NCBI RefSeq assembly: GCF_011386835.1
Contig: NC_088791.1
Location: 191,084,001-191,148,000 of the forward strand
Source of the DNA: Chrysemys picta bellii
Lineage: Eukaryota
Length of the DNA stretch: 64,000 bases
Direction: 5' to 3'
Within the stretch, counting starts at the first letter, position 1; each line of letters opens with the position of its first letter. Below are positions 19,420 through 19,928 of this stretch, piece after piece. The position numbers and the translations under genes were made by a program. The notes under the pieces were generated by a model, which was not told where the DNA came from, did no database searches, and was given only the letters and a program-made list of their open reading frames with translations.

Positions 19420-19928
19420 TGTTTATTGTATTGATTTTTCACAGTTACAGAAAACCCTGGGGTGGGGCCAGACAATTGTTATTTAATGACCGCAGATGTT
19501 GAGATTCGAAAAGTTAAGCTTCATCACCATTAAACACAAATTGTACATTTTGATATGATGTTGACAAAGTAAATCACCTTAAATCCAACTCTAATAACTT
19601 CTCAAGCAGCATTTTTCTTACTTCGCTTATCTGTTAATGTCTGTTATGATGATGGAAGTATTTTGTCTGTACACACATAGACAAAATACTTCCATCATCA
19701 TAACAGACATTAACAGATAAGCGAAGTAAGAAAAATGCTGCTTGAGAAGTTATTAGAGTTGGATTTAAGGTGATTTACTTTGTCATCATCATATCAAAAT
19801 GTACAATGTGTGTTTAATGGTGATGAAGCTTTAACTTTTCGAATCTCAACATCTGCTGTCATTAAATAACAACTGTCTGGCCCCACCCCAGGGTTTTCTG
19901 TAACTGTGAAAAATCAATACAATAAACA
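19420..19928. repeat. Long near-perfect inverted repeat (arms 19420-19668 and 19679-19928, 10-nt loop)
   Basis: Arm-to-arm comparison by eye gives 4 substitutions and 1 single-base indel in about 250 bp. Loop is GTACACACAT. Confidence 0.95.

What the first reader, a model, noticed from the sequence alone, without database searches (positions are those of the whole stretch)
19420..19928. 250-bp, ~98% perfect palindrome with a 10-nt loop in GART intron 2
Seen: arms of 249 and 250 bp differ by 4 substitutions and 1 indel, and the inner ~115 bp pair perfectly. It ends about 420 nt from the exon 2 donor. It sits inside an older repeat (similar AGGCT(A/T)GG(A/C)AGGATT at 19365 and 19956), with CTGTA at both junctions (19410-19414, 19667-19671). 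Inference: a fold-back/template-switch duplication that is very recent or kept homogeneous by arm-to-arm conversion. Established: such palindromes are unstable and cruciform-prone, and when transcribed give long dsRNA that is an ADAR/Dicer/MDA5 substrate. Every GART pre-mRNA would carry this hairpin.
Basis: partly seen in the sequence, partly recalled or inferred. Interest (0 to 1): 0.7.

Follow-up and report, generated by a model that had tools for sequence, protein, structure and literature searches.

The report
Fold-back palindrome in turtle GART intron
A real, inherited 509-base mirror-image duplication lies in an intron of a turtle's purine-synthesis gene GART; it was most likely made by one DNA-copying slip, a known kind of mutation that is unusually large here and has no shown function.

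Summary
The arms are 19420-19668 and 19679-19928 (249 and 250 nt) around a 10-nt spacer, and they differ by 4 substitutions and 1 indel. The inner 107 bp pair perfectly. The palindrome lies 417 nt downstream of the exon 2 donor of GART, which is on the minus strand.

It is not an assembly artefact. Contigs from independent public runs reproduce both arm versions, each with its own private letters, as well as the left junction and cover at the centre.

The arms are not unique DNA. About 1,700-1,800 contigs per genome run lie on the laid stretch, most of them on the arm. Those relatives run on in the same order past the turn. None shares the outer 31 nt. This copy departs from the family majority far more (about 7%) than its arms differ from each other (1.6%).

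So the family is not itself palindromic. A polymerase most likely folded back and copied about 250 nt of resident, already old intron DNA. Whether this happened at replication or repair, or during insertion of the small repeat that abuts the left arm, is open. An insertion-time retroelement fold-back, common in this genome, fits poorly.

The transcript strand folds into a 249-bp hairpin of -423 kcal/mol. Editing, small RNAs and effects on splicing are untested.

The scan has found smaller template-switch hairpins elsewhere in this genome, so this is a known kind.

The parts
19420..19668 (.). Left arm of the palindrome (249 nt). From about 19451 inwards it belongs to an abundant interspersed repeat family. 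The outer ~31 nt are not shared with that family.
   Evidence: alignment of the arms; tables 2, 3 and 8 (depth 73-126 at 19420-19450 against up to 149,000 at 19606-19636; plus-strand contigs over 19445-19591 with 0 differences in X1 and X2).
19669..19678 (.). 10-nt spacer (GTACACACAT), the turn of the fold-back. It is flanked by GTCT and AGAC.
   Evidence: In one search table 2 the bins 19668-19705 have only depth 20-43 in three DNA runs, so the turn is locus-specific. One contig per run fits two places of the stretch.
19679..19928 (.). Right arm (250 nt), the reverse complement of the left arm with 4 substitutions and 1 extra A. At the site opposite 19491 it keeps the family's majority letter.
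   Evidence: In one search table 8, minus-strand contigs over 19445-19591 carry exactly 4 other letters and 1 gap in X1 and X2.
19544..19563 (.). About 20 nt that read as the reverse complement of the family's usual sequence at this place. Both arms share the small inversion, which lies between TTGT(A/C) and GACAA.
   Evidence: table 7 (loose-end consensus before 19564 and behind 19517) compared by eye. This is inference.
19358..19419 (+). Left-flank repeat 'F', a different and less abundant repeat. It ends ...CACTGTATATAT against the left arm and matches its own family's majority letters.
   Evidence: table 2 (depth about 6,000 at 19358-19419, falling to locus level in the next bin), table 3 (no rows for this stretch) and table 7 (relatives in run X15 continue leftwards with ..CGAAAC..).
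19953..19973 (+). 21-nt stretch in the right flank that resembles the start of F (18/21). Its meaning is unknown.
20346..20494 (-). GART exon 2, the first coding exon (ATG at 20490; [23 protein letters not shown]...). The donor GT is at 20345-20344.
16064..16164 (-). GART exon 3 (AISISNHDALVQFCKDNEIKLVVVGPEVPLAAG; boundaries approximate). It marks the 3' end of the host intron.

Best explanation
This is a genuine, inherited inverted duplication in intron 2 of GART in a turtle (the painted turtle, according to earlier notes of this scan).

Proposed mechanism: while copying this stretch, a polymerase turned back on its own product or on the opposite strand. The turn was near GTCT / 10 nt / AGAC. 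The polymerase copied about 250 nt of DNA that already lay there, then returned to the original template. The copied segment was an old, decayed copy of an abundant interspersed repeat plus about 31-40 nt that this family does not share. The result is arm, 10-nt loop, reverse-complement arm.

Since then the arms have picked up 4 substitutions and 1 indel. The structure has no demonstrated function. Because GART is read from the minus strand through it, every unspliced GART transcript can fold it into a 249-bp hairpin.

Shown: the anatomy, its reality in independent runs, the repeat origin of the arms, and that the turn and the outer ends are specific to this locus.

Inferred: the polymerase slip, which arm is the original, and the age.
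For: Anatomy.

Reality:
- X1 and X2 carry different organism labels and come from different studies. Each holds one contig identical to the left arm over 19445-19591 and one minus-strand contig with exactly the 4 substitutions and 1 gap of the right arm.
- An X1 contig bridges the left junction (19385-19474, 0 differences).
- The bins at the centre are covered at single-locus depth in X1, X2 and X9.
- X9, a third label, has a contig that ends exactly at 19420 at about double depth.

The family is not palindromic:
- Loose ends behind 19623-19638 continue for 99-255 nt or more. Their first 30 letters are collinear with, but diverged from, the arm's own sequence up to the turn.
- Depth falls from 1,300-2,750 just before the turn to 20-43 across it.

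The outer ends are not a shared element end: the bin 19420-19450 holds only about the depth of the two arms themselves (73-126), against thousands further in.

The copy was old when duplicated (table 3). In the 93 best-conserved nt, both arms share 7 non-CpG departures from the family majority: 19508, 19575, 19576, 19586, 19598, 19627 and 19635. The arms differ from each other there at only 1 site. Only 19 of about 1,800 contigs are 99% or more alike, so no close sibling copies are evident.

Other points:
- No target-site duplication of 6 nt or more, even with the ends shifted by up to 8 nt.
- No hammerhead and no coding frame.
- The mechanism is established: PMC5453318 describes template switches that create inverted repeats. 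Earlier notes of this scan report 36-bp and 73-bp examples in this genome.
Against: No outgroup or empty-site sequence could be obtained. The ancestral one-arm state, the direction of copying and the switch points are therefore not shown.

Published short template switches are tens of bases long. 250 nt is long for that class.

The argument from the unshared outer 31 nt fails if that part of the family element is simply rare or fast-changing.

Majority letters from contig depth are a rough guide, and a small subfamily carrying this copy's letters cannot be excluded.

The outer ends read ...CAATAAACA, which contains an AATAAA word. That looks like a transcript 3' end and would favour a retro-copied origin.

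The depth ratio of the left and right arm versions is about 3:1 in both X1 and X2. This is unexplained.
Confidence: 0.62

Rival explanations
1. A variant of the same idea: the fold-back was coupled to insertion of the short repeat fragment F (19358-19419). At a nicked target, the free 3' end snapped back and copied 249 nt of its own flank (the present right arm) before the reverse transcriptase moved on to the element's RNA. The left arm would then be new and F would be equally young.
For: F's right end abuts the left arm within 0-7 nt. Depth drops from about 5,900 to locus level exactly at the 19419/19420 bin border.

F shows no departures from its own family's majority letters, so it looks young (table 3).

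Relatives of F in run X15 continue leftwards with a ..CGAAAC.. word (table 7). F's orientation, with its 3' end towards the arm, is the one this model needs.

Earlier notes of this scan describe retroelement insertions in this genome that captured inverted copies of their own flank. PMC8557442 describes complex tandem and inverted Penelope-like insertions and a bias for microsatellites; the sequence here is TATATAT.
Against: F's class is not established. No hammerhead or other diagnostic feature was found.

The only candidate target duplication is 5 nt (CATAG at 19358 and 19676), which is within chance.

The adjacency could be coincidence in a repeat-rich intron.
Confidence: 0.2
2. Insertion-time fold-back of the mobile element itself. 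A Penelope-like or LINE cDNA would have folded back on itself during integration, as in many palindromic Penelope fragments in this genome. Both arms would then be new, and their outer ends would be the element's 3' end.
For: Earlier notes of this scan report many such Penelope fold-backs of 180-440 nt in this genome. PMC8557442 describes the habit.

The arms belong to an abundant family. Exactly equal arms with a short loop fit self-priming. There is an AATAAA word at the outer ends.
Against: No family copy shares the outer 31 nt, although copies truncated at the 5' end should all carry the 3' end (table 2).

The family continues 99-255 nt or more beyond the turn on the other side, so the arm is an internal piece.

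The arm is about 7% from the family majority, against 1.6% between the arms (table 3).

There is no hammerhead and no target-site duplication.
Confidence: 0.12
3. One copy of a palindromic mobile element (a fold-back or MITE-type family) whose consensus is itself a long hairpin.
For: The arms are repeat-derived. The same gene holds older hairpin-shaped repeats at 14021-14266 and 17142-17356. A few contigs join sequences like F and like the arm on opposite strands (table 5).
Against: The centre and the outer ends occur only at locus depth. Relatives run straight past the turn. There is no target-site duplication and no second copy in the window.
Confidence: 0.03
4. An assembly or chimeric-read artefact.
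For: Palindromes can arise from hairpin-adapter chimeras in long-read assemblies. No spanning read was seen here.
Against: The arm-specific variants recur in contigs from short-read runs of other studies and organism labels. The left junction is bridged and the centre is covered.
Confidence: 0.02
5. A hairpin kept by selection or by arm-to-arm gene conversion. It might serve as a source of small RNAs or as a regulator of GART splicing or expression.
For: A 250-bp palindrome with a 10-nt spacer should be fragile, yet three organism labels share it.

In X9 a single contig at about double depth spans 19420-19615 and carries a mosaic of the reference's left-arm and right-arm letters. This suggests that the arms are identical there in that organism (tables 3 and 8).

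The hairpin is extremely stable.
Against: There are no RNA, editing or small-RNA data. The miRNA-family matches are all below their gathering scores and are the expected response to any perfect hairpin.

Five differences against zero between lineages is compatible with chance and with recent origin. The arms are junk-repeat sequence.
Confidence: 0.05

Closest known systems
Template-switch (four-point model) mutations that create inverted repeats and hairpins (Loytynoja and Goldman 2017, PMC5453318; also PMC8794818)
   Same: A segment is replaced or extended by the reverse complement of adjacent DNA, which creates a perfect stem with a short loop in one step. No target duplication forms and no mobile-element ends are involved. 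Earlier notes of this scan report smaller cases (36 and 73 bp) in this genome.
   Different: The arm is about 250 nt, against the tens of bases described for the short-range class. The ancestral state was not seen here, so the four switch points cannot be placed.
Fold-back (snap-back) palindrome formation at a DNA break or nick, including flank capture during target-primed reverse transcription
   Same: A free 3' end pairs with a few complementary bases nearby (here GTCT and AGAC, 10 nt apart) and copies its own strand. This gives arms of exactly equal length around a short loop. A young repeat fragment abuts one arm.
   Different: Classical fold-back at a break gives a terminal or dicentric palindrome. 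Here both normal flanks are kept, so a second switch or a joining step is needed. The link to the neighbouring repeat F is only positional.
Penelope-like element tandem and inverted insertions (PMC8557442), which are abundant in this genome according to earlier scan notes
   Same: They give palindromic, dead-on-arrival structures of a few hundred bases inside introns, made of repeat-family sequence.
   Different: The arm ends are not shared element ends. There is no hammerhead motif and no target duplication. The arms are much more alike to each other than to the family.
Intronic inverted-repeat dsRNA substrates of ADAR (for example inverted Alu pairs; PMC12695637)
   Same: A long, near-perfect intramolecular duplex in a pre-mRNA intron.
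   Different: Here the stem is 249 bp at 98% identity with a 10-nt loop, which is much closer to perfect than typical inverted Alu pairs. Editing, sensing and processing are untested.

Membership tests
Template-switch / fold-back inverted duplication of resident DNA | One arm is the exact reverse complement of directly adjacent sequence, with a short spacer. | tested here: met
   arms of 249 and 250 nt, 98% complementary, 10-nt spacer.
Template-switch / fold-back inverted duplication of resident DNA | The ancestral (outgroup) state has only one arm at this site. | not testable with these tools
All three organism labels laid appear to have both arms.
Template-switch / fold-back inverted duplication of resident DNA | The arm boundaries are unrelated to mobile-element ends, and there is no target-site duplication. 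| tested here: met
   the family runs on past the turn, and the outer 31 nt are not shared; no direct repeat of 6 nt or more at the ends.
Template-switch / fold-back inverted duplication of resident DNA | The copied sequence is older than the duplication. | tested here: inconclusive
   table 3: 7 shared departures from the family majority in 93 nt, against 1 difference between the arms. A small subfamily cannot be excluded.
Penelope-like fold-back insertion | The arms are 3'-terminal pieces of the element, so their outer ends are shared with other copies. | tested here: not met
   table 2: 19420-19450 holds only locus-level depth.
Penelope-like fold-back insertion | A hammerhead ribozyme motif in the terminal repeat. 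| tested here: not met
   no hammerhead family up to E = 10; no core pattern in the region. Minimal, mutated motifs could escape both searches.
Penelope-like fold-back insertion | A target-site duplication flanking the unit. | tested here: not met
   the best match is 5 nt with shifted ends, which is within chance.
Palindromic MITE / fold-back transposon family | Other copies share the same hairpin centre and terminal repeats. | tested here: not met
   the centre bins are at depth 20-43, and relatives continue unlike the palindrome; no other copy in the window.
microRNA precursor families (Rfam MIR837, MIR2593, mir-302 and others) | A score at or above the family's gathering threshold. | tested here: not met
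   the best match scores 77 bits against a threshold of 117. Matches occur on both strands, with pairing only, as any perfect hairpin gives.
Palindromes homogenised by arm-to-arm gene conversion | The arms stay more alike within a lineage than orthologous arms are between lineages. | tested here: inconclusive
   in X9 one contig at about double depth carries a mosaic of the reference's left-arm and right-arm letters over 19420-19615. There are too few sites (5) and the species names are not known.

The most novel reading that the evidence does not exclude
A 250-bp palindrome with only a 10-nt spacer is tolerated and transmitted for millions of years inside a housekeeping gene. In one lineage its arms are kept identical by arm-to-arm conversion. 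Either turtles handle such cruciform-prone DNA unusually well, or the hairpin RNA does something, for example as a small-RNA source or a brake on exon 2/3 splicing.
Probability: 0.06. Interest if true: 0.65.

Novelty: new member of a known kind. Interest (0 to 1): 0.3.

Why it matters
This is a clean, large natural example of one-step hairpin creation by a polymerase fold-back, sitting in a constitutively transcribed gene. If the ancestral state were recovered from related turtles, it would give exact switch points for an event about ten times longer than the usual short template switches.

It would also offer a natural test of two questions: how long a near-perfect palindrome survives in a slowly evolving vertebrate genome, and whether a 249-bp intronic duplex is edited or diced. 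As it stands it is a mutational fossil without shown function.

Tried and rejected
Tools and limits:
No orthologous introns could be obtained.
Exon 2 was also kept out of that stretch.
- The exons were read separately by reference.

Searches that found nothing:
- Other copies of the arm or of the left-flank repeat in the window (blastn, nhmmer).
- Earlier scan notes searched by sequence.
- Rfam gave only sub-threshold miRNA-hairpin matches and no ribozyme.
- The hammerhead core pattern has one match in the window, at 29596, which is no more than chance.
- Six-frame translation of the arm has stops in all frames.
- Similarity between the flanks and the arms is not above shuffled controls.
- The target-site duplication scan found nothing beyond 5 nt.

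Readings I rejected:
- A palindromic family consensus.
- An assembly artefact.
- A miRNA gene.
- Significance of the CTGTA words.
- Clustering of the arm differences in the outer part (P about 0.06).

Not achieved: I could not name the repeat family, because no repeat library is at hand.

Full report
**The observation**

The window holds an inverted repeat with arms 19420-19668 and 19679-19928 around the spacer 19669-19678, which reads GTACACACAT. A global alignment of the left arm with the reverse complement of the right arm shows 4 substitutions, at 19475, 19491, 19539 and 19561. The right arm also has one extra A opposite 19515.

All five differences lie in the outer 142 nt, which has P about 0.06 by chance. 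Complementarity stops sharply at 19420 and 19928, where the flanks match no better than random. Nothing else in the 64-kb window resembles the arm (blastn, nhmmer).

**Gene context**

GART lies on the minus strand. The first coding exon follows a pyrimidine-rich acceptor and has 4 nt of leader before its ATG. It runs 20494..20346, with the ATG at 20490 and the peptide [23 protein letters not shown]... Its GT donor is at 20345-20344. The next exon (AISISNHDALVQFCKDNEIKLVVVGPEVPLAAG) is at about 16164..16064.

I read the exons separately by reference and built no joined model.

Earlier notes of this scan identify the genome as a turtle, specifically the painted turtle. I did not test that identification.

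**Is it real?**

I laid the contigs of four public runs on 18800-19705 at 80% likeness. That stretch holds the left flank, the left arm, the spacer and 27 nt of the right arm. I chose it because the tool states that it turns away stretches with a long repeat.

- Runs X1 and X2 have different organism labels and come from different studies. Each holds one contig identical to the left arm over 19445-19591, and one contig on the opposite strand with exactly 4 other letters and 1 gap, which is the right arm. The ends of these contigs lie 30 nt outside the first and last variant sites, as expected for two branches of an assembly bubble.
- An X1 contig bridges the left junction (19385-19474) with no differences.
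- The bins across the spacer are covered at single-locus depth (20-43) in X1, X2 and X9. One contig per run 'fits two places', as a self-complementary centre would.
- X9, a third organism label, has a contig of 197 nt that ends exactly at 19420, at roughly double the depth of its neighbours.

An artefact would not reproduce arm-specific letters in independent data, so I rule one out. Two caveats remain.

**What the arms are made of**

About 1,700-1,800 contigs per DNA run lie on the laid stretch. Summed depth reaches 21,000 at 19482-19512 and 85,000-149,000 at 19575-19636, against about 40 for a single locus (table 2). The inner 210 nt or so of the arm therefore belong to an interspersed repeat family with thousands of copies.

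Four observations bear on the mechanism.

1. Relatives do not turn at 19668. Loose ends behind 19623-19638 run on for 99-255 nt or more, and their first 30 letters are collinear with, but diverged from, the arm's own last 30 nt. Depth collapses to locus level across the spacer.

2. The outermost bin, 19420-19450, holds only what the two arms themselves contribute (73-126). No other copy shares the arm's outer end.

3. This copy is far from the family's majority letters. In the 93 best-conserved nt, both arms share seven non-CpG departures (19508, 19575, 19576, 19586, 19598, 19627, 19635). Between the arms there is only one difference there, at 19491, where the right arm keeps the family letter. 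At 19624 this copy keeps a CpG that most copies have lost. Only 19 of about 1,800 contigs are 99% or more alike, roughly what the locus itself supplies.

4. This copy also carries an inversion of about 20 nt (19544-19563) relative to the family, shared by both arms.

**Mechanism**

The turn and the outer ends are specific to this locus. The arm is an internal piece of a longer element plus about 31-40 nt the family does not share. The copy looks about 7% decayed while its arms are 1.6% apart.

Together these points favour a fold-back copy of DNA that was already resident and old. A polymerase turned back, plausibly where GTCT and AGAC lie 10 nt apart. It copied about 250 nt in reverse complement and rejoined the original template. 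This is the template-switch class of mutation (PMC5453318), of which earlier notes report 36-bp and 73-bp cases in this genome. Here it is roughly ten times longer than usual.

There is no target-site duplication, no hammerhead and no open reading frame.

**A variant I cannot exclude**

The left flank 19358-19419 is a different repeat, which I call F, with summed depth about 6,000. Its similarity to its relatives ends exactly where the left arm begins. It shows no departures from its own family majority, so it looks young. Relatives of F in run X15 continue leftwards through a ..CGAAAC.. word. F ends in CACTG followed by a TA run.

If F is the 3' tail of a retroelement, its orientation fits the following model. 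The nicked target's 3' end snapped back and copied its own flank. Reverse transcription of F followed, making the left arm the new one. Earlier notes describe retroelement insertions in this genome that captured inverted flank copies. PMC8557442 documents the complex inverted structures of Penelope-like elements.

The evidence for this variant is positional only. The 21-nt match to F in the right flank is unexplained.

**Rivals**

- An insertion-time fold-back of the family element itself is common in this genome according to earlier notes. It fits poorly here, because 5'-truncated copies should all share the outer end and none does. The AATAAA word at the outer ends is the one feature that speaks for it.
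- A palindromic MITE-type family is contradicted by the locus-specific centre.
- The Rfam matches to miRNA precursor families are all below their gathering scores, occur on both strands, and match by pairing alone.

**Age**

Four substitutions in 249 nt is 1.6%. Turtles evolve at about a third of the human rate (PMC4054807). Without conversion between the arms, the age is of the order of ten million years, with a very wide error from only four events. This estimate is inference and uses a human rate recalled from memory.

In X9 the single double-depth contig carries the reference's right-arm letter at 19539 and at the indel. At the other variant sites it shows no departure from the left arm, although 19491 is masked by the family's letters. 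This suggests that its arms are identical over at least 196 nt. That fits either differences that arose after the lineages split or conversion between the arms. Five sites cannot decide between the two.

The 3:1 depth ratio of the left and right arm versions in both X1 and X2 is unexplained.

**Consequences**

The transcript strand folds into a single 249-bp stem with 4 mismatches and one bulge. Its free energy is -423 kcal/mol, with z = -47.9 against shuffles.

In run X15, which is only guessed to be RNA, low-depth contigs cover intron 19053-19440 up to the left junction. That is compatible with unspliced transcript but proves nothing.

That such duplexes are ADAR, Dicer or MDA5 substrates, and that such palindromes are fragile, is established elsewhere (for example PMC12695637 and PMC3855049). 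Neither was tested here.

**Verdict**

This is a real and unusually large, but mechanistically ordinary, fold-back duplication with no evidence of function. Orthologous introns from other turtles would settle the mechanism, and total-RNA and small-RNA data would test the hairpin.

Noticed in passing
window 14021-14266: An older hairpin-shaped repeat in a GART intron: arms of 114 nt, 76% complementary, 18 nt apart, G+C-rich. It is probably a decayed palindromic mobile element and is unrelated in sequence to the finding.
   Followed up: partly
window 17142-17356: Another older inverted repeat in a GART intron: arms of 72 nt, 82% complementary, 71 nt apart, with repeated GGTGCCTAA-type words. It looks like a MITE.
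   Followed up: no
window 3073-3229 and 4543-4705: Inverted repeats of about 160 nt (81-82% complementary) bracket about 1.3 kb in a G+C-richer stretch. They were not examined.
   Followed up: no
window 19358-19419: The left-flank repeat F has summed contig depth about 6,000 and ends ...CACTG plus a TA run exactly at the palindrome border. It matches its family's majority letters. Relatives in a possible RNA run continue upstream through a CGAAAC word. Its class is unknown.
   Followed up: partly
window 19544-19563: About 20 nt read as the reverse complement of what most family copies have at this place, between short inverted words. This is a small earlier inversion shared by both arms.
   Followed up: partly
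window 19445-19591 (table 8): The contig depths of the left-arm and right-arm versions are 39.7 and 14.3 in X1 and 41.1 and 13.8 in X2. That is about 3:1 in both, although other contigs differ 2-3 fold between the two runs. Possible causes are an arm polymorphism, conversion or a coverage bias.
   Followed up: no
window 28001-30000: This is the only G+C-rich block (58.5%) in the window. It lies between GART (minus strand) and SON (plus strand, from about 33 kb according to earlier notes), so it may be a shared head-to-head promoter island. The single hammerhead-pattern match at 29596-29621 is no more than chance.
   Followed up: no
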